A stretch of 64,000 nt of DNA from Podarcis muralis (GCF_964188315.1 NC_135667.1:5828001-5892000), one strand, 5' to 3'; positions 26,617 through 44,270 are shown, counted from the stretch's first letter. The notes: generated by a model from the sequence alone, not told the origin. Numbers and translations are program-made.

Positions 26617-29600
26617 ATGAAGTCTGCCGCTTTTGTGACAGGTTGGTGACCTCTCTGCCCTCCTCAGATGGGGGAAACTCGCTTTCTATCTCACATTCAC
26701 ACCATTTCTCACTGCATCTCCACTTTGCTCTGTACTTCCAGCCTGTCTCCAGATCCTTCTTGTGAGATCAACCCACCCAGGTAAAGTTGACTTCCATTCT
26801 TGTTTGTTGTTGTTGTTGTTTAGTCGTTTAGTCGTGTCCGACTCTTCGTGACCCCCTGGACCAGAGCAGGCCAGGCACTCCTGTCTTCCACTGCCTCCCG
26901 CAGTTTGGTCAAACTCATGCTGGTAGCTTCGAGAACACTGTCCCACCATCTCGTCCTCTGTCGTCCCCTTCTCCTTGGGCCCTCCATCCTTCCCAACATC
27001 AGGGTCTTTTCCAGGGAGTCTTCTCTTCTCATGAGGTGGCCAAAGTCTTGGAGCCTCAGCTTCAGGATCTGTCCTTCCAGTGAGCACTCAGGGCTGATTT
27101 CCTTCAGAATGGAGAGGTTTGATCTTCTTGCCGTCCATGGGACTCTCAAGAGTCTCCTCCAGCACCATAATTCAAAAGCATCCATTCTTCGGCGATCAGC
27201 CTTCTTTATGGTCCAGCTCTCACTTCCATACATCACTACTGGGAAAACCATGGCTTTAACTATACGGACCTTTGTTGGCAAGGTGATGTCTCTGCTTTTT
27301 AAGATGCTGTCTAGGTTTGTTATTGCTTTTCTCCCAAGAAGCAGGCATCTTTTAATTTCGTGACTGCTGTCACCATCTGCAGTGATCATGGAGCCCAAGA
27401 AAGTAAAATCTCTCACTGCCTCCATTTCTTCCCCTTCTATTTGCCAGGAGGTGATGGGACCAGTGGCCATGATCTTGGTTTTTTTGATGTTGAGCTTCAG
27501 ACCATATTTTGTGCTCTCCTCTTTCACCCTCATTAAAAGGTTCTTTAATTCCTCCTCACTTTCTGCCATCAAGTTTGTGTCATCTGCATATCTGAGGTTG
27601 TTGATATTTCTTCCGGCAATCTTAATTCCGGCTTGGGATTCATCCAGCCCAGCCTTTCACATGATGAATTCTGCATATAAGTTAAATAAGCAGGGAGACA
27701 ATATACAGCCTTGCTGTACTCCTTTCCCAATTTTGAACCAATCAGTTGTTCCATATCCAGTTCTAACTGTAGCTTCTTGTCCCACATAGAGATTTCTCAG
27801 GAGACAGATGAGGTGATCAGGCACCCCCATTTCTTTAAGAACTTGCCACAGTTCCAAGGGATGTAAGGGTGTCACTTTTTTATTTTAAAAATGTCACACA
27901 CACCCCTTGTTACAAAATTAAATAATTAGACGTACATGGCTAACAAAGAATGGGTCACTAGGAGGGGTATAATACTAAACACATTATTTTTCAGTACACA
28001 ATAATCTGGTGGTTACAGTAAACTAGTATAATGAATTCGTCAGCAAATCAACTTGAGTAAGAGCGAGGTAATGAGTTGTGCTTGCTTACCTGCACTATAC
28101 TGCAATATATGTTGTATTTCTCATCCATGTGTTGTCTCATATGTATATTTAGTAAAATCACACCATGCAGTGTAAAAATTATACTGTTTGTTTCCCTCCT
28201 TTTCCGTTTTTGCGACAGCTTCTCCATTACAGATGTTTGTCAGACTGTGTTATACCGGTGATCAATATTCATTAATTGCAAGTTTCTCCAAGTTCTGGCT
28301 ATTACCATTCTAGCTGCCGTTAATAAATGTGTTATCAATTCCTTCTTCATTGGTCCATACCTGAAGTATATAAATTAAGTGGTCACTGGGGTTGTCTGAG
28401 CTGCTATCTGAGAGATCTCTTTAAAAACTTCCTTCCAAAGTAGTTCTATTTGTAGACATTCCTACCACATATGTTGGTATGTGCGTATAATTTGCACCCT
28501 CCTGCAACATAACGGAGGGCTATTGGGTTTTAAGGGAGGCACCTCAGTGTTAAATACCATCCATGCACAATTTTTAGAGAACTTCCTCAAGTCGCAGATT
28601 CAGGGCCGGATTTAGGTTTGACGAGGCCCTCAGCTACTAAAGGTAATGGGGCCCTTTATATGTCCAGCTGTCCTTTGTCAACAACAAATTGTCACTGTTT
28701 TTGTTGAATATATGCTATATGATAATTTATGGACCTCATAGGTATCTAATGTCTTTTACACATAACAAATAGGAGCCTACGCAACACAAAAGACTGTTGC
28801 TGTATGTAGGTTTTATTTTATTCATTTTTGTTTTTTATTTTGGAGATGTAAATCCTCTATTTTCCACCCACATTCTGATTCAATGTCTTTTTTTGTTGTT
28901 TGATTATCCATATTTTTTACCAGCATCTTGGTTTCCCCTTTCTTTACTTTAAAGCCAACCAATTTTCCAGATCTATTTATCTCTTTTGTCACGCCTAGTA
29001 TGCTCACTCTTGGTCGCTCTAAGTTTAACACAATGTCATCCGCAAATGCTTTTATTTTGTAATTTTGCTGGCCCACTGTTATTCCATGAATTTTATTATT
29101 CATCCTTATATTTTTTCTCCCTTTCTATGTTCCTTTCTATTTTCCACGGCTTGCCTTTTCCCTTTTGGCCACCACATGGCGCCAGAGACACTCCTGTACT
29201 TGACTGCTACTTATGTCTCACATCCCACAAGTAAGACATAGGAAGCGCTTTTCATAGTGTGTGCCTTCAGTTTCCTTCTCAGGGTGTCTTCGTCCTCTGG
29301 GTTTCATGCGCTTGTTTCCTGACTGGCTGGCTTTCCTCTCCTCCTCTGTGATCTCCAGGGATCCCACCTGCAGCAATTCTTTCCTTGGATCCCCAGCACC
29401 ACATCTACATGAAAGGTGAAAAGGTGACTCTCACTTGTTCGGCTCCTGGTGGTTTGAAGGTGGCAGGATACACCTTCTTCAAAGAACAGCAAGATCGGAC
29501 CTTCAAGGAGTTGCCCAATAGTGGAATGGGGCCTTATGAGATGTTCCGTGTCAATGAAGATACTGTTGGGAATTACAGCTGTGTATACTGGATCATGCCC

Positions 29601-32600
29601 TCAAGTGAGGAAATCTTTTCCTCACAGAGCAACCTTGTCTTTGTAGCCATGGCAGGTGAGCATCTTTGCATTTTACTGTTTGGCGTTGTCTCTTTCATTC
29701 GCAACACAAGAGGGAGAGGAGCATTGTGTTCCGAAAGGATTTCAGACTGCCTTGAAGGTAATAAGGTACAGTGGCACCTTGGCTCTCGAACTTAATCCGT
29801 TCCGGAAGTCCGTTCGACTACCAAAACCGTTCGAAAACCAAGGCACGGCTTCCAATTGGCTGCGGGAGCTTCCTGCACTCAATCTGAATCAGCGTCAGAC
29901 ATTTGGCTTCCAAAAAACGTTCACAAACCAGAACACTTACTTCCGGGTTTGTGGCGTTCAGGAGCCAATTTGTTCGTCGACTAAGCCGTTCGAGAACCAA
30001 GGTACCACTGTACAGTGGTGCCTCGGGTTACAGATGCTTCAGGCTACAGACGCTTCATGTTACAAACTCTACTAACCCCGAAATAGTACCTCGGGTTAAG
30101 AACTTTGCTTCAGGATGAGAACAGAACAGAAATCGCTCAGTGGCAGTGGGAGGCCCCATTAGCTAAAGTGGTGCTTCAGGTTAAGAACAGTTTCAGGTTA
30201 AGAACGGACCTCCCGAACGAATTAAGTTCTTAACTAGAGGTAAAGGTAAAGGTAAAGGGACCCCTGACCATTAGGTCCAGTCGTGGCCGACTCTGGGGTT
30301 GTGGCGCTCATCTCACTTTATTGACCGAGGGAGCCGGCGTACAGCTTCTGGGGTCATGGGGCCAGCATGACTAAGCCGCTTTTGGTGAACCAGAGCAGCA
30401 CACAGAAACGCCGTTTACCTTCCCGCCAGAGCGGTACCTATTTATCTACTTGCAATTGGACGTGCTTTCGAACTGCTAGGTTGGCAGGAGCAGGGACTGA
30501 GCAACGGGAGCTCACCCCGTCGTGGGGATTCGAACCGCCGACCTTCTGATCGGCAAGTCTTAGGCTCTGTGGTTTAACCCACAGCGCCACCCGCGTCCCA
30601 TGTCAGTCTCATTCAGGCGCTGACAAATTAGACCGCTTGCTTTACTAAAACCCAAAGTGATTAGCTGTTGTGGTGATAAACCACAAGAGTGAAGTTTTTG
30701 ATGGACAATTTTAATCCAGGCGCTCTTGTGACAATCTTGCAGCCACAGAGCTGGCAATCAACGAAGCAGAATGCCAGCGTCAGAGCCATGGCTTTTCATA
30801 GAGCTGTCCAGCCAAAATAAATGCATTCGCTCTAAAAGCCAAGTGGACCACAGTCTCTTAACCATTGAGCCAAGTCATTGTCCTCAATTGATTGCTTCTC
30901 CTTTGTGAACGATCACTCTAGATCCCCATCCCTCTCCGACACTGATAGTGGATCCTCCACCTGGAGTGGTGAACGAAGGAGACTCGCTAAACCTCACTTG
31001 CCTGGCCAACGAGGGGGAGACTGAGAAAAGATTCACTTTCTACAGGGATGGACTTGCGATAACCTTCAGCGATGAAGGATCTGTGTGGAGCTTCAGAGAA
31101 CCTGGAACTAACTTCTCAAATGCCTCTGTTAGCATCTTGAAAGCCAAGCTCAACCATAGTGGAGAATTTGCTTGCAGCTATGAGGAAGAAGTTAGTGGCC
31201 GGTGGGTGACCTCTTCCAGGAGCCAGACGGTGAAAATCATGGTGAAAGTCCCAGGTGAGTCATCTGGAGAAGGTTAGAGCTCAGTTTAGCAGAAGGATAT
31301 TCCATTTTTCTGTGTTGATTGAAGTATTAAGGGGGAGCCACTGGATGGGCCAGAAAAAGGGGGGAGATTGAGCAAAATATCTGTCATTCCCTGTAACCTG
31401 TAAATGTCATCTATTTTATTTCCTATGCCTTTTGTTGTTGTTTTGTTGTTTCGTTGTGTCCGACTCTTCATGACCCCCTGGATCAGAGCACGCCAGGCCC
31501 TCCTGTCTTCCACTGCCTCCCACAGTTTGGTCAAACTCATGCTGGTAGCTTCGAGAACACTGTCCCACCATCTCGTCCTCTGCTGTCCCCTTCTCCTTGT
31601 GCCCTCCATCTTTCCCAACATCAGGGACTTTCCAGGGAGTCTTCTCTTCTCATGAGGTGGCCAAAGTCTTGGAGCCTCAGCTTCAGGATCCGTCCTTCCA
31701 GTGAGCACTCAGGGCTGATTTCCTTCAGAATGGAGAGGTTTGATCTTCTTGCAGTCCATGGGACTCTCAAGAGTCTCCTCCAGCACCATAATTCAAAAGC
31801 ATCAATTCTTCGGCGATCAGCCTTCTTTATTGGTCCAGCTCTCACTTCCATACATCACCTCAGCCTTATTGTTGGGTAAGAGTGAGCAGTTCATATCTGT
31901 GATGGATTGAAAGGAGAGAGGGGGGGGTGTTATTTGCAGGGCTCAAACATCTCTCCTCTTCAACTTGTCTAGAAAAGTCTGACCCTAGTTACTTGTCCTG
32001 AAAGTTACTCTTCAGAAGTTGAATATTTATTTTGCATGACATTTTCTGCCTGTCTCGCATCCAAGGACAAGGAAGCCTTATTAAAAACACAATAGCCTAA
32101 CCATTTTTCCTTTCTTTTCTCAGATCCTTCTCCACCATCAGGTCCATCGCTGGCATTTGCGTATTTGGCAGTCCCCTTTGTGATTCTGATGATTCTCCTC
32201 ATCTTCTACTGTGGACAGAAAAAGACTGGTAGTTACGTGATGGGTTTTGAGGATACTGTGATGCTTGTGTGAATAATATTGTGTGTGCCTTTTCAGCCTT
32301 TGGCTCTCTTTTTCTCCTCTGTGGAAGCAGTGAAATGCCAGCAGGATTCTGAGCCAGAAGAACAGGAGGAGGAGGAGGAGGAGGAGGAGGAGGAGGAGGA
32401 ACTGCGTGATCTTGAAACAGGGGAGCCCCAAACAGCAGTTTGGCAGGAACACGACCAAGTAAGCGAGGAGATTCATGTGTAATATTAGTTACATCCATGA
32501 AAAACTGCCTAACTATTATGGAATGTGGTGCTACTGCAAGATGCAATGATAGCCTACAAATGAGCAAGCTCGTGGACAGAGATCTCTATTGTGTACTGCC

Positions 32601-33300
32601 TTTAGATGTCTTCTAAAAGTCAGGCAGTTGTTTATTTCCTTGACATCTGGTGGGAGGGCGTTCCACAGGGCAGGTGCCACCACCAAGAAGGCCCTCTGCT
32701 TGGTTCCCTGTAACCTCACTTCTCGCAGGGAGGGAACCACCAGAAGGCCCTCAGAGCTGGACCTCAGTTTCTGGGCAGAATGATGGGGGTGGAGATGCTC
32801 CTTCAGGCCTACTGGGCCTTTGAGGCCATTTAAGGCTTTCAAGGTCAGCAACAACACTTTGAATTGTGCTTGGAAACATACCTGGAGCCAATGATCAAGC
32901 ACTAGGAAGTGGGAGAAAAATTTCCTTCTCTGAGCTCCGGCTATGTAGGGTTGTAGGCCAACAGTAGGACATATGCTCTGCATGTAGAAGGTCTGAGGAT
33001 CAATCCCACCGGCCTCTTCAGGTAAGGCTGTGAAGGACTTAGAAAGCTGCTGCCAACCAGTGTCCACAATACCAGATAAGGTACCCAGGGAGGTTATTTG
33101 CCAGGCCCCTCCTGCTTTCAGTGCTGACCAACGGCACCCTCACATTCCTTCTGTTCCCACAGGACTCAACCATCACCTACGCCACCATCAAATTCTGCTT
33201 TGCTAAGTCTTGCTTAGGAAATGGGCTCCGACTGGTGGAAGAGGAGAAGGTGATGTACAGCGAGGTTCTGTTTCCACCTAAGAACAGAGGAAGAAAGTGA
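26617..33300 (+). CDS. Ig-superfamily inhibitory receptor 'gene A' (LILR/CHIR/FCRL-like; 2 Ig, TM, 2 ITIM; 355 aa)
   Basis: Exons 26617-26641, 26742-26780, 29359-29655, 30922-31254, 32124-32228, 32328-32458, 33163-33300 (1068 nt, phases 1-1-1-1-1-0, open frame). Signal MKSAAFVTACLQILLVRSTHP, two C2-type Ig exons, TM LAFAYLAVPFVILMILLIFYC, tail with ITYATI and VMYSEV; AATAAA at 33595. Confidence 0.85.
26803..27852 (-). mobile_element. BovB LINE, 5'-truncated (intron 2 of gene A)
   Basis: ORF 26820-27572 MAESEEELKNLLMRVKEES...GVTKSRTRLND; (CAA)n tail. Confidence 0.92.
29769..30240. mobile_element. two abutting TA-flanked mariner-type MITEs (29769-30010, 30013-30240)
   Basis: TIRs cagtggcaccttggctctcgaac / gttcgagaaccaaggtaccactg, shared TA, then a cagtggtgcctcggg copy. 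Confidence 0.8.
30241..30599 (-). mobile_element. Sauria SINE, full length
   Basis: (ACCTTT)n tail to gcgtccc head. Confidence 0.88.
31431..31858 (-). mobile_element. BovB LINE 3' fragment
   Basis: IKKADRRRIDAFELWCWRRLLRVPW on minus strand. Confidence 0.88.
32366..32401 (+). repeat. coding (GAG)11GAA microsatellite = 12 Glu in gene A tail
   Basis: Direct count in exon 32328-32458. Confidence 0.9.
32596..32905 (-). mobile_element. L2 LINE 3' fragment
   Basis: FKVLLLTLKALNG...QRAFLVVAPALWNALP on minus strand. Confidence 0.85.
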
Positions 33301-33702
33301 AGACATTGTGGAAAGGAAAGAGATTGTGGAGTTCTGAGTGGCTGCCAAAGGATTCTACATCGCCTGCCAGTTGGTTTATTGCTCTCAGCCAGGGCATGGC
33401 TGAAGGCACAGGAGGTGCCCACCTTGCGGAAGCTAAGCAGGTCCGGGTCTGGTCAGTGTCTGGGTGGGTGACTAGCTGGGAACCACAGATGTGCTGCTGT
33501 GATGATGGAAGAAAGGATGGGATGTAAATTTAAGAAAAGAAAACAAACAAACAAATACGTGTTGGTTCCACAGAAATCAACGCAGCTTCTATTCAATAAA
33601 GACAATTCAATTCTTACAAGTAGAATTCTGATGTGATTAAAGATTTGCAGTGTCATTTACAAACATGGTTGGGAAAGAGAAGAGGGCAGAACCATCTCAA
33701 AA

Positions 33703-34205
33703 TGACAACAAATCCAAAATGCAGCTGCCAGACTGGTGATTGGGAGTGGCCAACGGGACCATATAACACGAGTCCTGCATTGGCTCCCAGGACGTTTCTG
33801 GGCAGAATTCAAAGTGTTGGTGCTGACCTTTAAAGCCCTAAACGGCCTCAAAGGCCCAGTAGACCTGAAGGAGCGTCTCCACCCCCATCGCCCAGCCCAG
33901 ACACTGAGGTCCAGCTCCGAGGGCCTGCTGGCAGTTCCCTTTCTGCAAGAAGTGAGGTTACAGGGAACCAGGCAGAGGGCCTTCTCGGTGGTGGCACCTG
34001 CCCTGTGGAACGTTCTCTCATCAGATGTCAAGGAAATAAAGAACTATATTACTCTTAGACGACATCTGAAGGCAGCCCTGTATTGGGAAGTTTTTAATGT
34101 TTGATGTTTCATTGTGCTTTTATGGTTGTTGGAAGCCGTCCAGAGTGGCTGGGGCAAGCCAGTCAGATGGGCGGGGTACAAATAATAAAATTATTATTAT
34201 TATTA
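33703..34205 (+). mobile_element. L2 LINE 3' fragment with (TTA)n tail
   Basis: RDHITRVLHWLP..F.AEFKVL...ALWN.L. Confidence 0.85.
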
Positions 34206-34668
34206 TTGTGCTTCCTGCATAGTAATACGGTTCTCATGAATATTTATTTTTTAATTTAATTTAATTTGTATGCTACCCCTCAACCGAATTTCTCAGCATG
34301 GTTCACAGATTAAAACCGTAAAGGTCATAATAAGAACAAGAACAAAGCAAAACAATAACCCCCCTCCCAAAAACACATTTAAATAATTGCCTGGCACCTA
34401 AAAATGTATAATGAAGGCGCCAGAAGGAGCCTCCGTGGGGAGAGCATCTCACAAACAGGGAGCCACTGCAGAAAATGTTGCAGATATAAAATTTTGTGCT
34501 GTTTGAAGCAAGTGGTAGCTGAAGAACTGACTCCTTTGGAAATGAAACTTTGTCCAGACCCATGAAAATATTGCTTAAACGTTTACTGGCAGAACTTTAT
34601 TCAAAATAATTAAAACATCCATACAATATCTTGTGTTGACCAGCATAGGCTGAGCAACTTACAAAATA

Positions 34669-34908
34669 CAGTGGTACCTCAGGTTAAGTACTTAATTCGT
34701 TCCGGAGGTCCCTTCTTAACCTGAAACTGTTCTTAACCTGAAGCACCACTTTAGCTAATGGGGCCTGCTGCTGCCGCCACGCCACCAGAGCACGACTTCT
34801 GCTCTCATCCTGAAGCAGTTCTTAACCTGAAGCACTATTTCTGGGTTAGCGGAGTCTGTAACCTGAAGCGTATGTAACCTGAAGCATATGTAACCCAAGG
34901 TACCACTG
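34669..34908. mobile_element. Tc1/mariner-superfamily MITE (cagtggtacc family)
   Basis: TIRs with TA TSD. Confidence 0.85.
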
Positions 34909-34940
34909 TACGAAATAGTCAAAATAGACCTATAAGCAGA

Positions 34941-34981
<41 letters not shown>

Positions 34982-35642
34982 CTCTCTCTCTCTCCTACCA
35001 GCTTTCCAACTCTTGCCAAGCCATTATCACATGGATTGTTCTCTGTTGCGTTCAGAGAAAGACTCCATTTGCATCTTCACTCTGTTGGGTTTGGAAGGCA
35101 AAGACTCAAAGGCAGCTCTGTTCAAAATGGCAGATTTGCAACTCAATACCTTCATCACATGATCAAAGGTTCACTCTCAGTAGAGAGTAGAGAAGCAAAG
35201 AGCAGGTCATCATTAGCTAATTACAGCTCAGAAAACTAATTACAGCTTTAGAAAACAGCATTGGGGAAAACTTCAATGTTACCAATATACATTTAGCCAT
35301 GTTCCATTTTAAACCTTCTTTAATACGTTTACATTTTTCATTGCTGTGTGAATTAAACCATTACGCCTAACAGAAAAGGCCCGTTCTCGTGTTGACACCC
35401 TCCAGACCTCTTGTGGAGGAGGCACACAAACAAGGTCCTCGGTTGATGATCGCAGGGTCTGGATCCCTTCATGTAGGGAGAGGCGGTCGTTGAGGATCTT
35501 ATTCCTGCTTCCTGGTGCTGGAGTTCCCATTCTGCTGATCCTGGTCTCTTCTTTCCCCAAAAGGAATGCCTGGTTGGCCACTGTCAGAAGAAGATGCTGG
35601 GCTAGAAGTCACTTTGGCCAGATTAGCAGGACTCTTCTAACA

Positions 35643-35968
35643 TGTTGTTGTTGTTGTTGTTTAGTCATTTAGTCGTGTCCGCCTCTTCGTGACCCCATGG
35701 ACCAGAGCACGCCAGGCACTCCTGTCTTCCACTGCCTCCTGCAGTTGGTCAAACTCATGCTGGTAGCTTCGAGAACACTGTCCCACCATCTCGTCCTCTG
35801 TCGTCCCCTTCTCCTTGGGCCCTCCATCTTTCCCAACATCAGGGTCTTTTCCAGGGAGTCTTCTCTTCTCATGAGGTGGCCAAAGTCTTGGAGCCTCAGC
35901 TTCAGGATCTGTCCTTCCAGTGAGCGCTCAGGGCTGATTTCCTTCAGAATGGAGAGGTTTGATCTTCT
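35643..35968 (-). mobile_element. BovB LINE 3' fragment
   Basis: MRREDSLEKTLMLGKMEG..RRGRQRTRW on minus strand. Confidence 0.88.
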
Positions 35969-36379
35969 TCCTGAGGCCCCTTTTTGAGTCGACCGCCTGT
36001 GATTGCTGCGTCCTTCCGCTTTCTCATTTCTAGCCTCGTGCTACCGCCTCCTCAAGTGTTTTGGTTACAAAGGAGGCTGAGCATAGGCGCTGCAAGGAGA
36101 GATGTGGTGAGATGGTTGGAACATTGGTTGTTCCACCCAGCAGCTTTTGGTGTCCTCAAGGCCTATGAGCTAAGCTGTGTGCTGCGCTGGTGGCCCAGGT
36201 GCAATGCTTTGTGGTGGCTGGGAGGAAAGGAGGTGATGACGGTTCAGTTCCTGCTCTTGTCTTTGCGTCTGACAGTCTGGCAGAGTCAGGGAGAGACAGC
36301 CCATCCTCTCTTTGAAAGCAGAGAGACAGCGGTGGAGCAGAGGACGCAGCCATTGGCCTTCGAGGGACGCCGGCCGAGC

Positions 36380-37182
36380 ATGAAATTTGCTGCTTTGATA
36401 ACAGGTTTGGGGCCTCTCTCTTGTTATAGACAAAATAGGGGGTTTGGCTTTTGCTGCCCTAGTCGCCAAGGTCGCCTAAGCCCATGATCCGTCAGAGATG
36501 AATGGATGGAGGGAAGACCTTGGTAACCAAAAACTCACTCCTTATCCTTATCCTTCTGGCGGTTCCCTCGCTGCGAGAAGCCAAGTTACAGGGAACCAGG
36601 CAGAGGGCCTTCTCAGTGGTGGTGCCCACCCTGTGGAACGCCCTCCCACCAGATGTCAAAGAGAAAAACAGCTACCAGACTTTTAGAAGACATCTGAAGG
36701 CAGCCTTGTTTAGGGAAGCTGTTAATGTTTAATAATGGGACGCGGGTGGCACTGTGGGTTAAACCACAGAGCCTAGGACTTGCCAATCAGGTCGGCGGTT
36801 CGAATCCCCGTGACGGGGTGAGCTCCCGTTGCTCGGTCCCTGCTCCTGCCCACCTAGCAGTTCGAAAGCACGTCAAAGTGCAAGTAGATAAATAGGTACC
36901 GCTCCCGCGGGAAGGTAAATAGCATTTCCGTGCGCTGCTCTGGTTCGCCAGAAGCGGCTTAGTCATGCTGGCCACATGACCTGGAAGCTGTACGCTGGCT
37001 CCCTCGGCCAATAAAGCGAGATGAGCGCCGCAACACCAGAGTCGGCCACGACTGGACCTAATGGTCAGGGGTCCCTTTACCTTTACCTAATGTTGAATAG
37101 GTTATTGTATTTTAATATTTTGTTGGAAGCCGCCCAGAGTGGCTGGGGAGACCCAGCCAGATGGGTGGGGTATAAATAAATT

Positions 37183-37227
<45 letters not shown>

Positions 37228-40200
37228 TGCATCTTATGACTGACAGGCTTGGACTCAGCCACACTGGCAAAGGCCAAGATCAAGAGAGACCAAGCCTAAG
37301 AGGGCCACGGATTCCAGCCACCCTGAAGTAAGACGTCAAAAGCCAGGGGAAATCCGACGCTGCGTGCTCATTCCTGTCAATCTGACACCGAGGAATCTGA
37401 GCTCTACCCACTTTTCTGATTTCCGGGTCAGCTGCCACAAGTCTGCCCTAACCACTAGGCAGTCTTGATATTCTTTTTCTTTGGCGATCTCTCGTAGCTG
37501 AAAACATTGGCAGCATTAAGATAAATTCAACAGTGTAAATAAGTTTTGACAGATGCAATCATGGAATACTGAATGGTACAGTTTTTTATGTAAAATATGC
37601 AGGGATTTATGATAAGCAAAATGAACCATAGGAAGTTCGCAGATGATACAACGGTGGTTGATTTAATCACGGCTGGAGAGGGGGAGGCGGTCTATAGGAA
37701 GGAAGTTGAGCAGTTGGGGGAGTGGTGCAGGAAAAACAACTTACTCCTTAACTTAAAGAAAACAAAAGAGATCTTTGTGGACTTTAGGAAATGTAAATTG
37801 AATATTCAGCCACTTATTATTGAGGGGAAGTGCGTGGAACAGGTCTCGGTGTTTCGATTTCTGGGAATGGAGTTGAGAGACGACCTAACCTGGGGAGAAA
37901 ACAGCAAAGACTTGATGAAGAGAGCACAGCAGAGGTTATATTTTCTGAGAATCCTCCGGAAAAACAATCTCAGAGGACCTGTTGATGGCATTTTACCATT
38001 GTACTGTTGAGAGTGTATTAACTTATGGTCTGTGTGTGTGGTTTGGAAGCTGCACGGCCAGGGAAAAAACAACGCTGTCCAGGGTTGTAAAGACTGCGGA
38101 GAGAATAATTGGGTGCACTCTTCCCACTTTGGATCAATTCTATGCTTCCAGGTGCCATAAGAAAGCTGTAGAGATAGCACAGGATAGTGCGCACCCCAGA
38201 AATGATCTCTTTCAGCTTCTGCCTTCTGGAAGAAGGTACAGGGTTATAAAGACCAGGACTAGCCACCTGAGAAACAGTTTCTATGCAAATGCAATTCTGG
38301 TTCTAAACGCAGCATAAGGAGTCTCTATAGTATATTGTATTTTAAAATGTGGTTTCAGAGTTTTTAGGGGTTTTTGAATGTTTTTTGTAGTTTTTCAGTT
38401 TCATTGTTGTGTATGGGACAATGACAATAAAGATATTGTATATCGAAAGGGAAGAAGGGAAGTCACTGATATTTTAATGAATATTTTAAATTGTAAAACA
38501 GAACATTTAATAATGGTGTGATTGTGAGATAGAGGGTGAGTTTATATAAACTCTATCTCACAAACCACACCATTTCTCATGACATCTCTCCTTTGCTCTT
38601 CACTTTTAGCCTGTCTGTGGATCCTCCTTTGGAGTTCAGTCCATGCAGGTAAAGTTGGTTTCCATTTTTGTTTAATTGATTTTACTAAGCAGTTGCACGG
38701 GATGGCCGGGGTGTCAATTTTGTATATGGTTAAATTCACAGCTCAGGTGCATCTGACAGCAGCAAAAGGCAGAAATCCAGTAGGTCAAATTTTCCACAAT
38801 GGGAGATGTGGCTATAAGCAAGGTATCACCTGTTGGCTTTTTGTTGCTGCTGAGTGTGTCGAACCAAACGTTCTGGAAGGCCGGCAAATGCCACCTTGCT
38901 AGTCAAGAAAACCCCAAAACTAAATGGTAGTCGTTGCAAGAATGAACACATACCGTATTTTTCGCTCTATAAGACACACTTTTCCCCCTTCAAAAATTAA
39001 GGGGAAATGTGTGTGCATCTTATGGAGCGAATGCAGGCTCCTTGGCTTCAGCGATAGCAACGCGAAGCCTCCGAAGCGCAGAGGGAGAGCTGCCCCTGCG
39101 AGCTCCTCCGGAGGCTTCATGCTGCTTTCGCTGAAGCCACCTGAAGCCCCCGGAGTGCAGCAGGAGTTCCCGCTGCACTCCGAAGGCTTGCGGATAGCCG
39201 CCTGAAGCCTGGAGAGCGAGAGGGGTCAGTGCACACCGATCCCTCTTGCTCTCCAGGCTTCGCTTCTCTGGAGAGGCGCTAAACAGCTGTCCCTCTCTGC
39301 ACAGCGCTCCTTCAGCGAAGTGGGAGAAGAAATGGAAGGGGCTCCGTTTCTCCTGCCGCTTCGCTGAAGGGGCACTGAGCAGAGAGGGGGAGAATTATTA
39401 TTTTTCCTGTTCTCTGCCTCCTATGGTCCGGTGCGTCCTATAGAGCGAAAAGTACGGTGTGTGTTTATATTCCTTTGCTTCGGTCTTTCCCCAAATAAGA
39501 TACCCTCTTTATTCTGTGCTCCTTCGCTTCTCAGAGCATCTTTGCCCTCTTGGTTTCATGCGTTTGTTTCCTGACTGGCTGGCTTACCTCTCCTCCTCTG
39601 TGATCTCCAGGGATCCCACCTGCAGCAATTCTTTCCTTGGATCCCCAGCACCACATCTACATGAAAGGTGAAAAGGTGATTCTCACTTGTTCGGCTCCTG
39701 TTGGCCCGAAGGTGGCAGGATACACCTTCTTCAAAGAACAGCAAGATCGGACCTTCAAGGAGTTGCCCAATAGTGGAATGGGGCCTTATGAGATGTTCCA
39801 TGTCAATGAAGATACCGTTGGGAATTACAGCTGTGTGTACTGGATCATGCCCTCAGGACAGGAAATCTGGTCCCCACAGAGCAACCTTGTCTTTGTAGCC
39901 ATGGCAGGTGAGCATCTTTGCATTTTACTGTTTGGTGTTGTCTCTTTCATTCGCAACACGAGAGAGAGAGGAGCACTGTGTTCTGAAAGAAGGATTTCAA
40001 TTTTTAAATATATAAATTTATTTATTTGGTTTTTCAGACTAAAATTTTACACTCACATCCAACATAGAAACAAGATTCCAAAAATCGCCTGGACTTCCCT
40101 CTCCCCTTTTGTTAATCCTATTCTTAATCATTTTTTAACAATCTTTTACCTCTCCATTGTGTCCAAAATTCGCCATTAAACTACAAGTGTTATTCCAAGT

Positions 40201-42884
40201 CTACTAACGATCTTAACTGTTTACAATGGTTTTTAAGATAAATTATAATTTTTCCCCATTTCTTATTAAAATGTTGGTCTTCCTGATTTCTTATTCTTCC
40301 AGTCATTTTAGCCATTTCAGAGTAATCCATCAACTTGATCTGTCATTTTTCTCTGGTAGGGACTTTATCTCCTTTCCGTCTATGGGCCAATAACATCCGT
40401 GCAGTCATGGTCGCATACATAAATAGTATTTTCTGCTCCCTTCGGATTTTGGCACCTAGAATTCCTAATAGGAAGGCTTCAGGGCGGGTTTTAAAGAAAA
40501 GGTTATTTGAAACATTTTTTTTTCAACTCACTGTATATCATTTCCCAAAATTCTTTTACTACCTTACATTTCCACCACATGTGATGAAAGGTGCCCTGAA
40601 AGAGGGATTTCAGACTGCCTAGAAGGTTTATAAGGTGAGCAGGTTCTGATAAGGAAAGGATCAGAGTTGATTTACTGAATGCAACTTCCTTCAGAGTAAA
40701 CATAGTGTGGGAACTTGCATGTATGAATCTTCCTTGTTGAGTTATTAAATATCAGGCGACTCTAACTTAAGCCCATTAATTTCACTGGGTCTGGTCTGAG
40801 TAGAACTTACTGGCCAGCAACACATTCTCAGGTCTCAAGGTGCAGATCTTTTTGGGAGAGTGGCAGTGGTGTAATCTGGGTGAAGAGTCTTCCTTGCCAA
40901 ATTTGCACGTGGCACAACGGGTCAGTGCTTCTTCTTTCTTCTTCTTTGGCGATCCCTCGTAGCCAAGTAAGATTGTCTTCCATAAACATGGTTTTAACAG
41001 TGAGTCCGTAAGTGACTGCGGAGGCCAATTCTGGATCCACACATCCTTCCTCAATGCGGACATAGGTTTCCGGGCAGGAGTTGATCACAGTGAGGGTTTG
41101 CCAAGCGTGCCTTCCTCTTAGCATGTTTCTCCCTTGCGTCCTGACTTCGAGCATCTTCAAAGTCCATGACACCTTTGGTAAAGGCTGTTCTCCAACTGGA
41201 GCGCTTGCAGGCAAGTGTTTCCCAATTGTCATTGTTTATACTTCAATTCTTTAGATTTGCCTTGAAAGAGTCTTCAAATCTCTTTTATTGACCACCAGCA
41301 TTACGCTTTCCATTTTTAAGTTGGGAATAGAGTAGTTGCTTTGGAAGACGATCATCAGGCATCCGCACAACATGACCAGTCCAATGAGGTTGATGTTGAA
41401 GAATCATTGCTTCGACACTGGTGATCTTTGCTTCTTCCAGTACACTGGCATTAGTTCGCCTGTCTTCCCAAGTGATGTGTACAATTTTTCAGAGACACCG
41501 TTGATGGAATCTTTTGAGGAGTAGACAAAGTGGGTCAGTGCATCTAGCTATTATCCAGAAGGTTGGTGTTTCAAGCCCACCAAAGGGCAGTTGTGAGCAG
41601 GATTCCTGCATTCTATGGACTCGATGACTCTTGGGATACCTTCCAACTCAACAATTCTATGATTCTAAATTCAGAAAATAAACTTCTTCAGGCACATGCC
41701 CAGTAATCAACAAAACAATATACCAGCCTTAGACCCCTGAGTTCCCATAGAACTGTCTGACCTTTGTTGAACGGTCACAGAAACTGGATAGCGAGAAATA
41801 TTTGTACAACTGGCATTGGAAACCCACAAAATGCTCACAATTGTGTACGGAGACGAAGCCGTAACTCGAAAGACAGTGTATGAGTGGTTTAAGCGTTTCC
41901 GTGAAGGGCGGCAAATGTTGACAGAATCCGTGAGTTATTGATGCGGGGTCGGCGTTTGTGCGTCCGAATGATGGCAGAAGAATTGCATATTCAGCATGAA
42001 ATCGTTACTGAGGTACTGAGTTGTCCCACCCTCCATATTCTCCCAATCTGGCCCCACCAGATTTCTTTCATTTTCCAAAACTGAAATCTGCACTGAAAGG
42101 ACACAGGTTTTCAAACATTTCACACATCTAAGCTGCTGTGACGAGGGAACTGAAAGCAGTACAAATAGAGAACTTCTCCAGAAGTTCCAGCAGTTCTACG
42201 AACGTTGTCAATGCTGCATTGTATCAGAGGAGGCCTACTTTGAAGGCCTGTAAGGCATGCATGTTCAAATATTTCTCGCTGTCCGATTTCTGTGACCATT
42301 CACCGAATTTTCCGGTCACACCTTGTAGTGGTGCATACTCTAGTTATCTCCCGCTTGGACTACTGCAATGTGCTCTACGTGGGGCTACCTTTGAAGGTGA
42401 CCCGGAAACTACAAGTAATCCAGAAGGCGGCAGCTAGACTGGTGACTGGGGGCGGCCGCCAAGACCATATAACACCGGTCTTGAAAGACCTACACTGGCT
42501 CCCAGTACGTTTCCGAGCACAATTCAAAGTGTTGGTGTTGACCTTTAAAGCCCTAAACGGCCTCGGCCCAGTATACCTGAAGGAGCATCTCCACCCCCAT
42601 CATTCTGCCCAGACACTGAGGTCCAGCGCCGAGGGCCTTCTGGCGGTTCCCTCACTGCGAGAAGCAAAGCTACAGGGAACCAGGCAGAGGGCCTTCTCGG
42701 TGGTGGCGCCCGCCCTGTGGAACGCCCTCCCATCAGATGTCAATGAGATAAACAACTACCTGACTTTCAGAAGACATCTTAAGGCAGCCCTGTTCAGGGA
42801 AGTTTTTAATGTGTATTTTTGGTTTTTGTGGAAGCCGCCCAGAGTGGCTGGGGAAACACAGCCAGATGGGCGGGGTACAAATAA

Positions 42885-42932
<48 letters not shown>

Positions 42933-43901
42933 GCTTCCTTTACAGGCCAAGTGGACCACAAGCTCTTAACTACTAAGCCATGTCTAGCTCACCTGCTCAT
43001 AACTTCTCCTTTGTGGATGATTCCTGCAGATCCCCCTCCTTTTCCGGTGCTGAAAGTGGATCCTCCGTCTGGAGTGGTGAACGAAGGGGACTCCCTGCGC
43101 CTCACTTGCTTGGCCAATGGGACCATAACCGAGAAGAGATTCCACTTCTTCAAGGATGGTGCTGAGATGGACACCAGTCATGAAGGATCCAGAGAACCTG
43201 CAAATACCTCACCAAACGCCTCTGTGAGCATCTTACAAGCCACGGTCAACCACAGTGGAGAATTTGCTTGCAGTTATGAGGAAGCGATTGGTGGCCGATG
43301 GGTTATGTCTCCGTGGAGCAAGACAGGGAAAGTCGTGGTGAATGTCCCAGGTGAGTCATTTTGGGGAAGTGAGAGCCATCTTTAGCAGTAGCACAATCCA
43401 CTTTAATGTATTGTGTGAAAATGAGGCTATCAATATGTCTGGTCTTCCACAAGGGACACAATTATTGCCATCTTCTTTATTTCATATGCTGCGTCTCAAC
43501 CTTCATGCTTGGGGGGAATGGAGGGGGACGGATGGAGATGGAGAGGTCTGCTCACATTTTATCCTATGTTTAGAGAAGTTTTTAATATTTAATGCTGTAC
43601 AGTGGTACCTCGGGTTACAAACGCTTCAGGTTACAGACTCCGCTAACCCAGAAAAATTACCTCGGGTTAAGAACTTTGCTTCAGGATGAGAACAGAAATC
43701 GTGCTCCGGCGGCCCGACAGCAGCAGGAGGCCCCATTAGCTAAAGTGGTGCTTCAGGTTAAGAACAGTTTCAGGTTAAGAACGGACCTCTGGAACGAATT
43801 AAGTACTTAACCCGAGGTACCACTGTATTGTTTTTAACAATTGATTGGGAGCCACCCAGAGTGGCTGGGGAAACCCAGCCAGATGGGTGGGGTATAAATA
43901 A

Positions 43902-43951
<50 letters not shown>

Positions 43952-44270
43952 GTTCTGCTCATGTTGTGAATGGGTTTCCGGAACGGATCCTGGTCGCAAC
44001 CAGAGGTACCACTGTGCCGTCATTAAAGAGATAAAAATCAACATTCAGAAATTATTCTTGGGACCTTTTTCAAATGACGTCACGCCTTCAGGACGAAAGA
44101 CCCAAGCGAAACACAACGAACAAATAACGGATTCCTCTTTATTCCTTTCAGGTCAGGGGCCACATTCATCGGCACCACCATCACCCACACCAAATCCATC
44201 CCTGTCACTGGGATATTTGCGCTTGGCTCCTACGCTCCTGATCCTGATGGTCCCACTCGCTTTCTGTTGA
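36380..44270 (+). CDS. Ig-superfamily activating-type receptor 'gene B' (2 Ig, TM with Arg, no cytoplasmic tail; 266 aa)
   Basis: Exons 36380-36404, 38610-38648, 39611-39907, 43030-43350, 44152-44270 (801 nt, all phase 1, open). Signal MKFAALITACLWILLWSSVHA; C-terminus PSLSLGYLRLAPTLLILMVPLAFC*. First donor (GTTTGG) is weak. Confidence 0.8.
36505..37225 (+). mobile_element. L2 3' fragment interrupted by a full-length Sauria SINE (36737-37088), ending in (ATC)n
   Basis: L2 sequence resumes after the SINE with taatgtt duplication. Confidence 0.8.
37629..38445 (+). mobile_element. Rex1/Babar-clade LINE fragment
   Basis: KFADDTTVVDLI...EV..L..WC..NNL.LN.KKTKE..VDFRK...AQQRLYFLR.L, then HCTVESVLTYG..VWFGSC in a second frame. 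Confidence 0.85.
38953..39457. mobile_element. pogo/Tigger-like non-autonomous DNA transposon
   Basis: TIRs ccgtatttttcgctctataag / ctatagagcgaaaagtacgg; related to 5430-5688 and 59438-59602. Confidence 0.8.
40010..40600 (-). mobile_element. L1 LINE 3' fragment
   Basis: FHHMWWKC..VKEFWEMIYSELKK (40503-40703) and ORF2 end on minus strand. Confidence 0.8.
40935..41530 (-). mobile_element. RTE-clade LINE 3' fragment
   Basis: Reverse-strand homologue of 17786-18325. Confidence 0.8.
41805..42290 (+). mobile_element. mariner transposase remnant (internally deleted)
   Basis: TVYEWFKRFREGR and PYSPNLAP.DFF.FPKLKS.LKG.RF...YFEG motifs with frameshifts. Confidence 0.75.
42321..42930 (+). mobile_element. 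L2 LINE 3' fragment with (TTA)n tail
   Basis: ORF 42292-42933 SRLDYCN.LYVGLP...DLHWLPVRFRAQFKVL. Confidence 0.9.
43600..43825. mobile_element. Tc1/mariner-superfamily MITE (cagtggtacc family)
   Basis: TIRs with TA TSD. Confidence 0.85.

What the first reader, a model, noticed from the sequence alone, without database searches (positions are those of the whole stretch)
29290..40010. First Ig exon homogenised between inhibitory gene A and activating gene B
By manual alignment, D1 of A (29359-29655) and B (39611-39907) differ at only 8 of 99 residues, and the flanking intron (~70 bp upstream, ~100 bp downstream) is also near-identical. D2 domains are only ~65% identical, and leaders, TM and tails have diverged. 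Localised identity of the distal, presumably ligand-binding, domain is the gene-conversion signature known for paired receptors such as SIGLEC5/14 and SIGLEC11/16, and is usually attributed to pathogen mimicry.
Basis: partly seen in the sequence, partly recalled or inferred. Interest (0 to 1): 0.72.

Follow-up and report, generated by a model that had tools for sequence, protein, structure and literature searches.

The report
Lizard immune-receptor pair shares one exon
Two neighbouring immune-receptor genes of the wall lizard, which duplicated long ago, keep copying their first (outermost) Ig-domain exon onto each other; this is a clean new example of gene conversion, a process already well known in paired immune receptors.

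Summary
The window is Podarcis muralis. Gene A (D1 exon 29359-29655) and gene B (39611-39907) differ at 8 of 99 D1 residues. A 467-bp block, the exon plus 87 bp and 82 bp of intron, is 94% identical. The D2 block is 73-75% identical (63% protein), the leader exons 74-79%, and the remaining intron cannot be aligned.

Synonymous divergence between A and B is 0.07 in D1 and 0.48 in D2, so protein constraint cannot explain the contrast. In P. raffonei, P. lilfordi and Zootoca loci, D2 splits by gene (100/100). The D1 core (29295-29600) groups A with B within species (P. muralis 97/96). Both paralogues share species-specific derived states, including a 9-bp intron deletion.

The tract is a mosaic. 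Its edges and a 19-bp FG-loop patch still sort by gene in P. muralis and P. lilfordi. A PHI-like recombination test gives p = 0.0002-0.001.

The best reading is recurrent gene conversion within a ~470-bp homology island. A carries two conserved ITIMs in an inferred tail. B has an Arg in its TM segment and stops directly after it. Expression, ligand and pathogen pressure are untested.

This is a new member of a known kind. The scan earlier noted another exon-restricted conversion elsewhere in this genome.

The parts
29272..29737 (+). Homology tract in gene A: D1 exon plus 87 bp of upstream and 82 bp of downstream intron. The near-identical core is 29302-29701.
   Evidence: blastn gives 94.0% over 467 bp to 39523-39989. 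Sliding-window identity is and the cross-species alignment.
39523..39989 (+). Homology tract in gene B, the counterpart of 29272-29737.
29359..29655 (+). Gene A D1 exon (Ig_2/Ig_3 domain, phase 1). The acceptor ends at 29358 and the GT donor is at 29656.
   Evidence: It is 100% identical to P. muralis XP_077773937 (P0012).
39611..39907 (+). Gene B D1 exon.
   Evidence: It is 100% identical to the D1 of P. muralis XP_077773938 (P0006).
29604..29622 (+). FG-loop patch (A: SSEEIFSS; B: SGQEIWSP at 39856-39874). It holds 6 of the 14 exon differences. It sorts by gene in P. muralis and P. lilfordi, whereas P. raffonei A carries the B type.
   Evidence: Site table and quartet patterns. The loop assignment comes from the AF2 model, where D1 blocks have pLDDT 83-94.
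29343..29351 (+). Nine intron bases present in A and B of P. muralis and in Zootoca B, but deleted in A, B and B2 of P. raffonei and P. lilfordi. This is an indel shared between paralogues.
40563..40636 (+). Diverged relic in the gene B intron. It is a second copy of the sequence at the 3' end of the tract and just beyond it, and shows the unconverted level of divergence.
   Evidence: It matches A 29692-29767 at 55 of 78 aligned columns (about 34 of 54 for the part inside the tract), whereas the copy inside the tract (39951-40003) is about 92% identical to A. It is also present in P. raffonei and P. lilfordi B and in Zootoca.
30921..31254 (+). Gene A D2 exon (boundaries approximate).
   Evidence: The A type is 95-96% conserved across Podarcis and 75% identical to the B type.
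43026..43356 (+). Gene B D2 exon (boundaries approximate).
26617..26782 (+). Gene A split leader: S1 (MKSAAFVT, about 26617-26641) and S2 (26741-26782).
   Evidence: ORF list. tblastn with P. lilfordi P0005 matches S2 14 of 14.
36380..38650 (+). Gene B split leader: S1 (MKFAALIT, 36380-36403) and S2 (38609-38650).
32124..32228 (+). Gene A stalk/TM exon, with an uncharged TM segment (Tyr at the position where B has Arg).
32328..32458 (+). Inferred gene A cytoplasmic exon 1. It is Glu-rich with a GAG repeat, 131 nt long, enters in phase 1 and leaves in phase 0, and has a GTAAGC donor.
   Evidence: Its length differs from P. lilfordi by 15 nt and from P. raffonei by 24 nt, both multiples of 3. 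It shows weak similarity to the tail of the transcript-derived protein P0014. The splice itself is not shown.
33163..33300 (+). Gene A last coding exon, with two canonical ITIMs (ITYATI and VMYSEV, tyrosines 26 residues apart) and a stop.
   Evidence: The exon region is 96-99% conserved, and both motifs and the stop are intact in P. raffonei and in both P. lilfordi copies.
44151..44270 (+). Gene B stalk/TM exon. It has an Arg in the hydrophobic segment (GYLRLAPTLLILMVPLAFC) and a TGA directly after it.
   Evidence: The annotated proteins of P. raffonei, P. lilfordi and Zootoca end at the same point.

Best explanation
Genes A and B are old tandem paralogues of an FcR/FCRL-like two-Ig-domain receptor. 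A roughly 470-bp island, the D1 exon plus its immediate intron flanks, is repeatedly overwritten between the two genes by non-reciprocal homologous repair (interlocus gene conversion). The rest of each gene evolves independently.

Shown here:
- The island is 94% identical, against 73-79% for the other alignable blocks.
- Its synonymous divergence is about one seventh of that in D2.
- The D1 core groups by species and D2 by gene.
- Derived substitutions and one intron indel are shared by both paralogues within single lineages.
- The pattern along the tract is a mosaic with significant spatial clustering.

Inferred:
- There were at least four separate events: in the P. muralis lineage, in the lineage leading to P. 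raffonei and P. lilfordi, in P. lilfordi alone and in P. raffonei alone.
- Tracts cannot spread further because homology ends on both sides. At the 3' side, sequence homologous to what follows the tract in A lies about 560 bp further on in B. A has repeat copies beyond the tract.
- A is an inhibitory receptor (two ITIMs). B is a tail-less partner with Arg in its TM segment that would signal through an ITAM adaptor. Conversion would then keep the membrane-distal domain of the two alike, as in other paired receptors.

Six of the eight remaining differences lie in the BC and FG loops. By Ig-fold topology (my knowledge, not measured on the model) these loops lie at the same, membrane-distal end of D1.

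The confidence given applies to recurrent gene conversion. The inhibitory/activating pairing is less certain, about 0.55.
For: Block identities.

Divergence: dS between A and B is 0.068 in D1 and 0.48 in D2. dS between Podarcis B and Zootoca B is similar in the two exons (0.16 and 0.15-0.17), so mutation rates do not differ. D1 has the higher dN/dS (0.4-1.3, against 0.17-0.46 for D2 orthologues), so it is not the more constrained domain.

Trees: D2 splits into A and B clades at 100/100, and joining P. muralis A with B is rejected at p-AU 3e-6. In the D1 core, P. muralis A+B get 97/96, P. raffonei A+B get 80/82, and monophyly of the A copies gives p-AU 0.04.

Quartet sites, P. muralis vs P. lilfordi: 15 'species' columns, all within 29343-29497; 13 'gene' columns, at 29271-29286, 29604-29622, 29713 and 29732; no 'cross' columns.

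Paralogue-shared derived states, polarised by Zootoca: 29411 and 29474 in P. muralis; 29401, 29605, 29665 and 29688 in P. raffonei; 29471 in all three P. lilfordi copies; the 9-bp deletion and 29403 in P. raffonei plus P. lilfordi. These include intronic and synonymous sites.

Recombination: the PHI-like permutation test gives p = 0.0002-0.0012, and 332 of 741 pairs of informative characters are incompatible.

Other support: the unconverted relic copy in the B intron, the ITIM exon and its conservation, the conserved B terminus, and the loop positions of the differences.
Against: - The whole-tract D1 tree is poorly resolved. It places P. muralis A with P. lilfordi A (84/97), and monophyly of the A copies is not rejected on it (p-AU 0.07).
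- I chose the core/edge partition after seeing the site pattern. Only the PHI-like test is free of that choice.
- Only three Podarcis species and one outgroup were available, and the outgroup lacks gene A. A third protein search found no Lacerta model.
- P. lilfordi has a third D1 copy (B2). P. muralis may have further copies outside the window that act as donors.
- No RNA read lay on any gene A exon in three RNA runs of unknown tissue.
- NCBI's gene A model has no ITIM tail, and a second possible acceptor at 32295 would give a short tail without ITIMs.
Confidence: 0.85

Rival explanations
1. A single ancient transfer or exon-level duplication of D1, followed only by slow divergence, with no continuing exchange.
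For: The junction structure (tract end plus relic copy) is shared by all Podarcis B genes and by Zootoca B. A founding event therefore predates the split of those genera. The tract edges and the FG patch sort by gene.
Against: dS between A and B in D1 (0.068) is well below the Podarcis-Zootoca value (0.16). Both paralogues share lineage-specific derived states in four different lineages, including a 9-bp intron indel. In P. raffonei A and B are 96.8% identical. The PHI-like test is significant.
Confidence: 0.06
2. Strong purifying selection on a critical binding domain keeps D1 alike, with no DNA transfer.
For: D1 is the membrane-distal domain and could be the binding domain.
Against: Intron flanks are 88-94% identical, while other intron sequence cannot be aligned. 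Synonymous divergence is about seven times lower than in D2. D1 has the higher dN/dS and the faster protein change between orthologues. A diverged relic of the same intron segment lies about 560 bp away in B.
Confidence: 0.02
3. A and B are a recent whole-gene duplication, and every part except D1 was later replaced from other, more distant family members.
For: The start of the B D2 block resembles the gene C D2 copies (79-82% over about 155 bp). The cluster is rich in rearrangements.
Against: The A-type and B-type D2, the TM exons and the leaders are each conserved as orthologues across species: 95-98% within Podarcis, and the B type 92% to Zootoca. Zootoca keeps both leader types. Several independent replacements would be needed, against one small island of exchange.
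Confidence: 0.04
4. Conversion is real but functionally neutral. It would be a by-product of tandem similarity, and the pair would not be an inhibitory/activating couple sharing a ligand. For example, B could be GPI-anchored or a decoy, or A could lack a working ITIM tail.
For: No expression was seen for A. The NCBI model of A has no ITIM tail. B has no cytoplasmic residue at all, which is compatible with a GPI signal. The loops most likely to touch a ligand are where A and B still differ. Zootoca lost the body of gene A.
Against: The two ITIMs, the stop and the reading frame of the Glu-rich exon are conserved in three species. B's Arg and terminus are conserved in four species.
Confidence: 0.3

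Closest known systems
SIGLEC5/SIGLEC14 (and SIGLEC11/SIGLEC16) paired receptors
   Same: Adjacent inhibitory (ITIM) and Arg-TM partner genes whose N-terminal, ligand-binding part is kept nearly identical by gene conversion while the TM segments and tails differ (PMC4042635).
   Different: Siglecs bind sialic acid through a V-set domain. The lizard domains here match the Ig_2/Ig_3/ig models best and V-set only below threshold, and only on D2. The best solved relative is FCRL5. This is an analogy in mechanism, not family membership. Here the converted tract is a single exon of about 470 bp and is a mosaic.
CEACAM1 and its ITAM-bearing decoy partners, including reptile CEACAM pairs
   Same: Exon-plus-proximal-intron identity of the N-domain exon between an inhibitory receptor and a partner, read as gene conversion. 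It has been described for alligator, gharial and turtles, and a figure legend of the same preprint analyses a common wall lizard CEACAM1/CEACAM1L1 pair (PMC13278318).
   Different: It is a different gene family and locus. That preprint favours intrachromosomal loop formation between genes in opposite orientation, whereas A and B here are head-to-tail on the same strand.
FcR/FCRL family (FCRL5, low-affinity Fc-gamma receptors)
   Same: FCRL5 is the best solved-structure match (E = 6e-20). NCBI names the relatives 'Fc receptor-like protein 5' and 'low affinity Ig gamma Fc region receptor II-like'. The leader is split over two exons. From my own knowledge, not tested here: the mammalian FCGR2/3 genes also exchange sequence, FCGR3B is a GPI-anchored twin of FCGR3A, and human FCGR1A lies next to a histone cluster, as this lizard cluster does.
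   Different: Orthology to any mammalian gene is not established. The ligand is unknown, and Ig binding was not tested.
LRC receptors (LILR, KIR, OSCAR, chicken CHIR)
   Same: Inhibitory and activating forms occur in tandem arrays. An Arg near the outer end of the TM segment is typical of FcR-gamma partners (my knowledge). The sequence matches are weaker but significant (LILRB2 3e-10, OSCAR 7e-7, KIR3DL1 3e-5).
   Different: These matches are weaker than the FCRL5 match, and locus orthology was not tested.

Membership tests
Paired inhibitory/activating immunoreceptors with concerted evolution of the ectodomain | Two linked paralogues with a near-identical membrane-distal domain and diverged remainder | tested here: met
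   The D1 tract is 94% identical, D2 73-75%, the leader blocks 74-79%, and the TM exons are too diverged to be found by blastn.
Paired inhibitory/activating immunoreceptors with concerted evolution of the ectodomain | Phylogenetic signature of conversion: the shared domain groups by species and the rest by gene | tested here: met
   D2 splits by gene at 100/100. In the D1 core P. muralis A+B get 97/96. Derived states, including an intron indel, are shared between paralogues. PHI-like p = 2e-4 to 1e-3. The edges and the FG patch are exceptions.
Paired inhibitory/activating immunoreceptors with concerted evolution of the ectodomain | One member carries cytoplasmic ITIM(s) | tested here: inconclusive
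   An exon with ITYATI and VMYSEV is conserved in three species, and the splice phases fit through an inferred 131-nt exon. However, there are no RNA reads on the A exons, and NCBI's model stops in a read-through of the TM exon.
Paired inhibitory/activating immunoreceptors with concerted evolution of the ectodomain | The other member has a basic TM residue and a short tail | tested here: met
   B has an Arg in its TM segment and a TGA directly after it. The annotated proteins end at the same point in P. raffonei, P. lilfordi and Zootoca.
Paired inhibitory/activating immunoreceptors with concerted evolution of the ectodomain | The activating member associates with an ITAM adaptor, and both members bind the same ligand | not testable with these tools
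   This needs co-expression and binding assays. A GPI anchor for B is not excluded.
FcR/FCRL family | Ig domains most similar to FcR/FCRL domain subtypes | tested here: met
   phmmer against PDB sequences: FCRL5 5.8e-20, next LILRB2 3e-10, FCRL4 7e-9. Pfam gives only the generic Ig_2/Ig_3/ig models.
FcR/FCRL family | Orthologous locus (conserved synteny with the mammalian 1q21-23 region) | not tested
   A histone cluster lies directly upstream in P. muralis, P. lilfordi and Zootoca. The link to the human FCGR1A/HIST2 neighbourhood is from memory only.
Siglec family (SIGLEC5/14) | N-terminal V-set domain with a sialic-acid-binding arginine | tested here: not met
   D1 matches Ig_2, Ig_3 and ig. 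V-set appears only below threshold, and only on D2. No Siglec is among the solved-structure matches.

The most novel reading that the evidence does not exclude
Conversion and selection act against each other inside one domain. Repeated conversion homogenises the D1 scaffold. The FG-loop patch (29604-29622), and to a lesser degree the BC loop, would be kept gene-specific by selection, so that the ITIM receptor and its tail-less partner hold deliberately different binding tips on an otherwise shared domain. P. raffonei, where the A copy took the B-type patch, and Zootoca, which lost the body of gene A, would be natural experiments in breaking that balance.
Probability: 0.2. Interest if true: 0.6.

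Novelty: new member of a known kind. Interest (0 to 1): 0.45.

Why it matters
Paired receptors with a converted binding domain are taken as footprints of host-pathogen conflict. Nearly all well-worked examples are mammalian (Siglec, CEACAM, KIR/LILR). This pair gives a compact squamate example in an FcR/FCRL-like cluster. It has sharp tract boundaries, an internal unconverted relic that calibrates the true age, several independent events across three Podarcis species, and a loop patch that resists homogenisation. That makes it a usable system for two questions: what limits conversion tracts, and whether selection filters them. It also corrects the public gene models. The NCBI model of gene A lacks both its leader and its ITIM tail, and gene B is fused with gene C in a 1378-residue model.

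Tried and rejected
- RNA support. One read-laying run (4,201 letters, within the 6,000 limit) used two bulk RNA runs, one single-cell RNA run and one run of unknown kind. Reads fell only on interspersed repeats (30046-30609, 31456-31878, 32584-32865) and none on a gene A exon. Run X1 looks like low-depth DNA. Expression and splicing of A therefore remain open.
- More lacertid species. The three word-based protein searches returned only P. raffonei, P. lilfordi, P. muralis and Zootoca models with this D1. The search among long models found nothing.
- NCBIfam gave no hit.
- A tblastn of tail peptides at a loose threshold mostly gave noise, but it did locate the ITIM exon.
- The whole-tract D1 tree is uninformative because the tract is a mosaic.
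- Rejected readings: protein constraint alone, an assembly artefact, and a recent whole-gene duplication (see rivals).
- I did not build or search a joined spliced model of gene A with its inferred tail. Exons were examined one by one by reference, and only database protein models were used whole.


Full report
**What is there.** The window is Podarcis muralis. The D1 and D2 exons match XP_077773937 (P0012, gene A) and XP_077773938 (P0006, gene B fused with gene C) without a difference. Downstream of a histone cluster (H1, H3, H2B, H4, H2B at 8.5-21.4 kb) lie head-to-tail Ig-receptor genes on the + strand.

- Gene A: S1 about 26617-26641, S2 26741-26782, D1 29359-29655, D2 about 30921-31254, stalk/TM 32124-32228.
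- Gene B: S1 36380-36403, S2 38609-38650, D1 39611-39907, D2 about 43026-43356, stalk/TM 44151-44267 followed by TGA.

All Ig exons match the generic Pfam Ig_2/Ig_3/ig models. The closest solved protein by sequence is FCRL5 (E = 6e-20), followed by LILRB2, FCRL4, OSCAR, KIR3DL1 and Fc-epsilon-RI alpha.

**The observation.** In the phase-1 frame both D1 exons are open and differ at 8 of 99 residues. The window's self-comparison gives 29272-29737 vs 39523-39989 at 94.0% over 467 bp, and this block has only these two copies in the window. Differences number 10 of 87 in the upstream intron, 14 of 297 in the exon and 5 of 82 in the downstream intron.

Identity along the pair rises from random to 58-65% at 29222-29301. 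It is 85-100% from 29302 to 29701 and 82% to 29741, then random again. The other unique, colinear blocks between A and B are far more diverged:

| Block | Identity |
|---|---|
| S1 | 74% |
| S2 | 79% |
| D2 and flanks | 73.5% (63% in protein) |
| 3' block | 67% |

The excess of D2 over D1 differences is overwhelming (Fisher p = 1e-15).

**Not constraint and not a young duplication.** Synonymous divergence between A and B is 0.068 in D1 and 0.48 in D2. The Podarcis-Zootoca orthologous dS is the same in the two exons (0.16 and 0.15-0.17), so the exons do not differ in mutation rate. D1 is in fact the faster domain at the protein level: dN/dS is 0.4-1.3, against 0.17-0.46 for D2 orthologues.

Gene B also holds an internal control. 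About 560 bp past the tract end, at 40563-40636, lies a second, diverged copy of the sequence spanning the tract's 3' end. It matches A 29692-29767 at 55 of 78 columns, and at about 34 of 54 for the part inside the tract. The copy inside the tract is about 92% identical to A. That relic and the junction are shared by all Podarcis B genes and by Zootoca B. A founding transfer therefore predates the split of those genera.

**Cross-species test.** I fetched the loci of P. raffonei (L001), P. lilfordi (L002, and a second block L004) and Zootoca vivipara (L003) through their annotated proteins and located the exons.

- D2 blocks: orthologues are 95-98% identical within Podarcis, B is 92% to Zootoca, and A vs B is always 74-77%. 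The tree splits A from B at 100/100, and joining P. muralis A with B is rejected (p-AU 3e-6).
- D1 tract: all Podarcis copies are 90-97% alike whichever gene they belong to. A vs B is 93.8% in P. muralis, 96.8% in P. raffonei and 93.2% in P. lilfordi. These values are no lower than between orthologues.

The whole-tract D1 tree is star-like. P. raffonei A+B group at 93/91 and P. muralis A with P. lilfordi A at 84/97. Monophyly of the A copies is not rejected (p-AU 0.07).

**The tract is a mosaic.** In the quartet P. muralis/P. lilfordi, all 15 columns with the 'species' pattern lie in 29343-29497. All 13 with the 'gene' pattern lie at 29271-29286, 29604-29622, 29713 and 29732. None shows the third pattern.

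Polarised with Zootoca, derived states are shared by both paralogues in four lineages:

| Lineage | Shared derived states |
|---|---|
| P. muralis | 29411, 29474 |
| P. raffonei | 29401, 29605, 29665, 29688 |
| P. lilfordi (A, B and B2) | 29471 |
| P. raffonei plus P. lilfordi | 29403 and a 9-bp intron deletion at 29343-29351 |

Several of these are intronic or synonymous, so parallel selection is not a credible source. Introgression between species cannot make two paralogues in one genome share a new state. A PHI-like permutation test on 39 informative characters gives p = 0.0002-0.0012, and 332 of 741 character pairs are incompatible.

Trees of the two parts agree with the site patterns. In the core (29295-29600) P. 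muralis A+B group at 97/96, P. raffonei A+B at 80/82, and monophyly of the A copies gives p-AU 0.04. In the edges plus FG patch P. muralis A groups with P. lilfordi A (89/99), and P. muralis A+B is rejected (p = 0.01). I chose that partition after seeing the sites, so the PHI-like test and the shared derived states carry the weight.

**Mechanism.** The best reading is recurrent interlocus gene conversion confined to a homology island of about 470 bp. At the 5' side identity falls gradually into old, roughly 60% homologous intron. At the 3' side homology stops abruptly at 29744/40003: sequence homologous to what follows the tract in A lies about 560 bp further on in B, and A has repeat copies beyond the tract. 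Conversion needs homology, so tracts cannot extend further. This last step is inference.

In P. raffonei the A copy carries the B-type FG patch, so that event ran from B to A. The relic suggests that the founding event copied from A into B, but an old local duplication in B would give the same picture.

**The eight differences.** An AF2 model of P0012 was built from a 12-sequence alignment (overall mean pLDDT 77.6; D1 blocks 83-94). It places the differences as follows:

- T23I in strand B.
- G30V and L32P in the BC loop.
- R63H at the end of strand E.
- S82G, E83Q, F86W and S88P in the FG loop.

By Ig-fold topology (my knowledge), BC and FG lie at the same, membrane-distal end of D1. The FG patch is the block that stays gene-specific in two of three species.

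**Inhibitory and activating?** Gene A has an uncharged TM segment. Downstream, 33163-33300 encodes ITYATI and VMYSEV, with tyrosines 26 residues apart, followed by a stop. That exon region is 96-99% conserved, and both motifs are intact in P. raffonei and in both P. lilfordi copies.

A direct splice from the TM exon (phase 1) would miss that frame. An intervening Glu-rich exon, 32328-32458 (131 nt, GTAAGC donor), converts phase 1 to phase 0. Its GAG repeat varies between species only by multiples of three. So an ITIM tail is likely but not shown: NCBI's model reads through the TM donor, another acceptor at 32295 would give a short tail, and no RNA read fell on any A exon.

Gene B has an Arg in its hydrophobic segment and a stop directly after it, in all four species. 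That fits an adaptor-coupled activating receptor, but also a GPI-anchored form. Ligand, expression and any pathogen link are untested.

**Compared with what is known.** The mechanism and layout match paired receptors such as Siglec-5/14 (PMC4042635) and CEACAM1 with its decoys. A 2026 preprint describes exon-plus-proximal-intron identity for crocodilian and turtle CEACAM pairs, and one of its figure legends analyses a wall lizard pair (PMC13278318). The present genes are not Siglecs or CEACAMs. They are FcR/FCRL-like, and I found no paper on this pair.

**Verdict.** It is a new member of a known kind, of moderate interest.

Noticed in passing
window 8526-21397: A replication-type histone cluster (H1 8526-9128 on the minus strand, H3 13705-14115 plus, H2B 14974-15360 minus, H4 16809-17120 minus, H2B 21017-21397 minus) lies directly upstream of the receptor cluster. 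Histone genes are also called upstream of gene A's leader in P. lilfordi (L002:2560-2940) and Zootoca (L003:5853-6233). This may mark synteny with the mammalian FCGR1/histone neighbourhood (from memory, not tested).
   Followed up: partly
L003:10166-17364 (Zootoca vivipara): Zootoca keeps gene A's S1/S2 leader exons and the start of the following intron, but lacks everything equivalent to window positions about 28588-35976 (A's D1, D2, TM and ITIM exons). NCBI isoform X1 (P0010) splices A's leader exons onto gene B. The ITIM partner is thus missing in this genus.
   Followed up: partly
L004:4628-15312 vs L002:15258-26723 (P. lilfordi): A recent segmental duplication (95-98% identical) about 40-55 kb downstream makes a second block. 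It has an A-like copy without a D1 exon and a B2 copy whose annotated product (P0013) continues into a gene-C-type TM segment and tail. B2's D1 is itself a mosaic of A-type and B-type sites. P. muralis may hold similar copies beyond the window end.
   Followed up: partly
L001:2034-2315 (P. raffonei gene A D1): There is an in-frame 15-bp deletion, equivalent to window 29493-29507, which removes five residues (DRTFK) of D1 in this species only.
   Followed up: no
window 29176-29229 and 32229-32272; 36236-56929: The public gene models look wrong. XP_077773937 (gene A) starts at an intronic ATG instead of the MKSAAFVT leader and ends in a read-through of the TM exon donor. XP_077773938 (1378 aa) joins gene B's D1-D2 to gene C and skips B's TM exon.
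   Followed up: partly
window 32364-32399: A (GAG)12 microsatellite lies inside the inferred cytoplasmic exon of gene A and encodes a poly-Glu run. Its length differs between Podarcis species by 15 and 24 nt.
   Followed up: partly
window 40236-40440 vs 53686-53889: Part of gene B's intron after D1 is 75% similar to the intron after the last D2-type exon of gene C. The same is seen in P. lilfordi. It looks like old family intron sequence rather than a transposon.
   Followed up: no
window 54697-54804: Gene C's TM segment also has an Arg at the position of B's Arg (LLYARWAIPLVILMVPLAF), yet it continues into a long cytoplasmic tail. B's stop codon replaces the first residue of gene C's RRKR stop-transfer motif, and the following codons in B still read RRKRS.
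   Followed up: no
window 30046-30609, 31456-31878, 32584-32865: RNA reads pile up only on interspersed repeat copies inside gene A's introns, and most run on into unlike sequence. This is transcription of repeat copies elsewhere in the genome, not of gene A.
   Followed up: no
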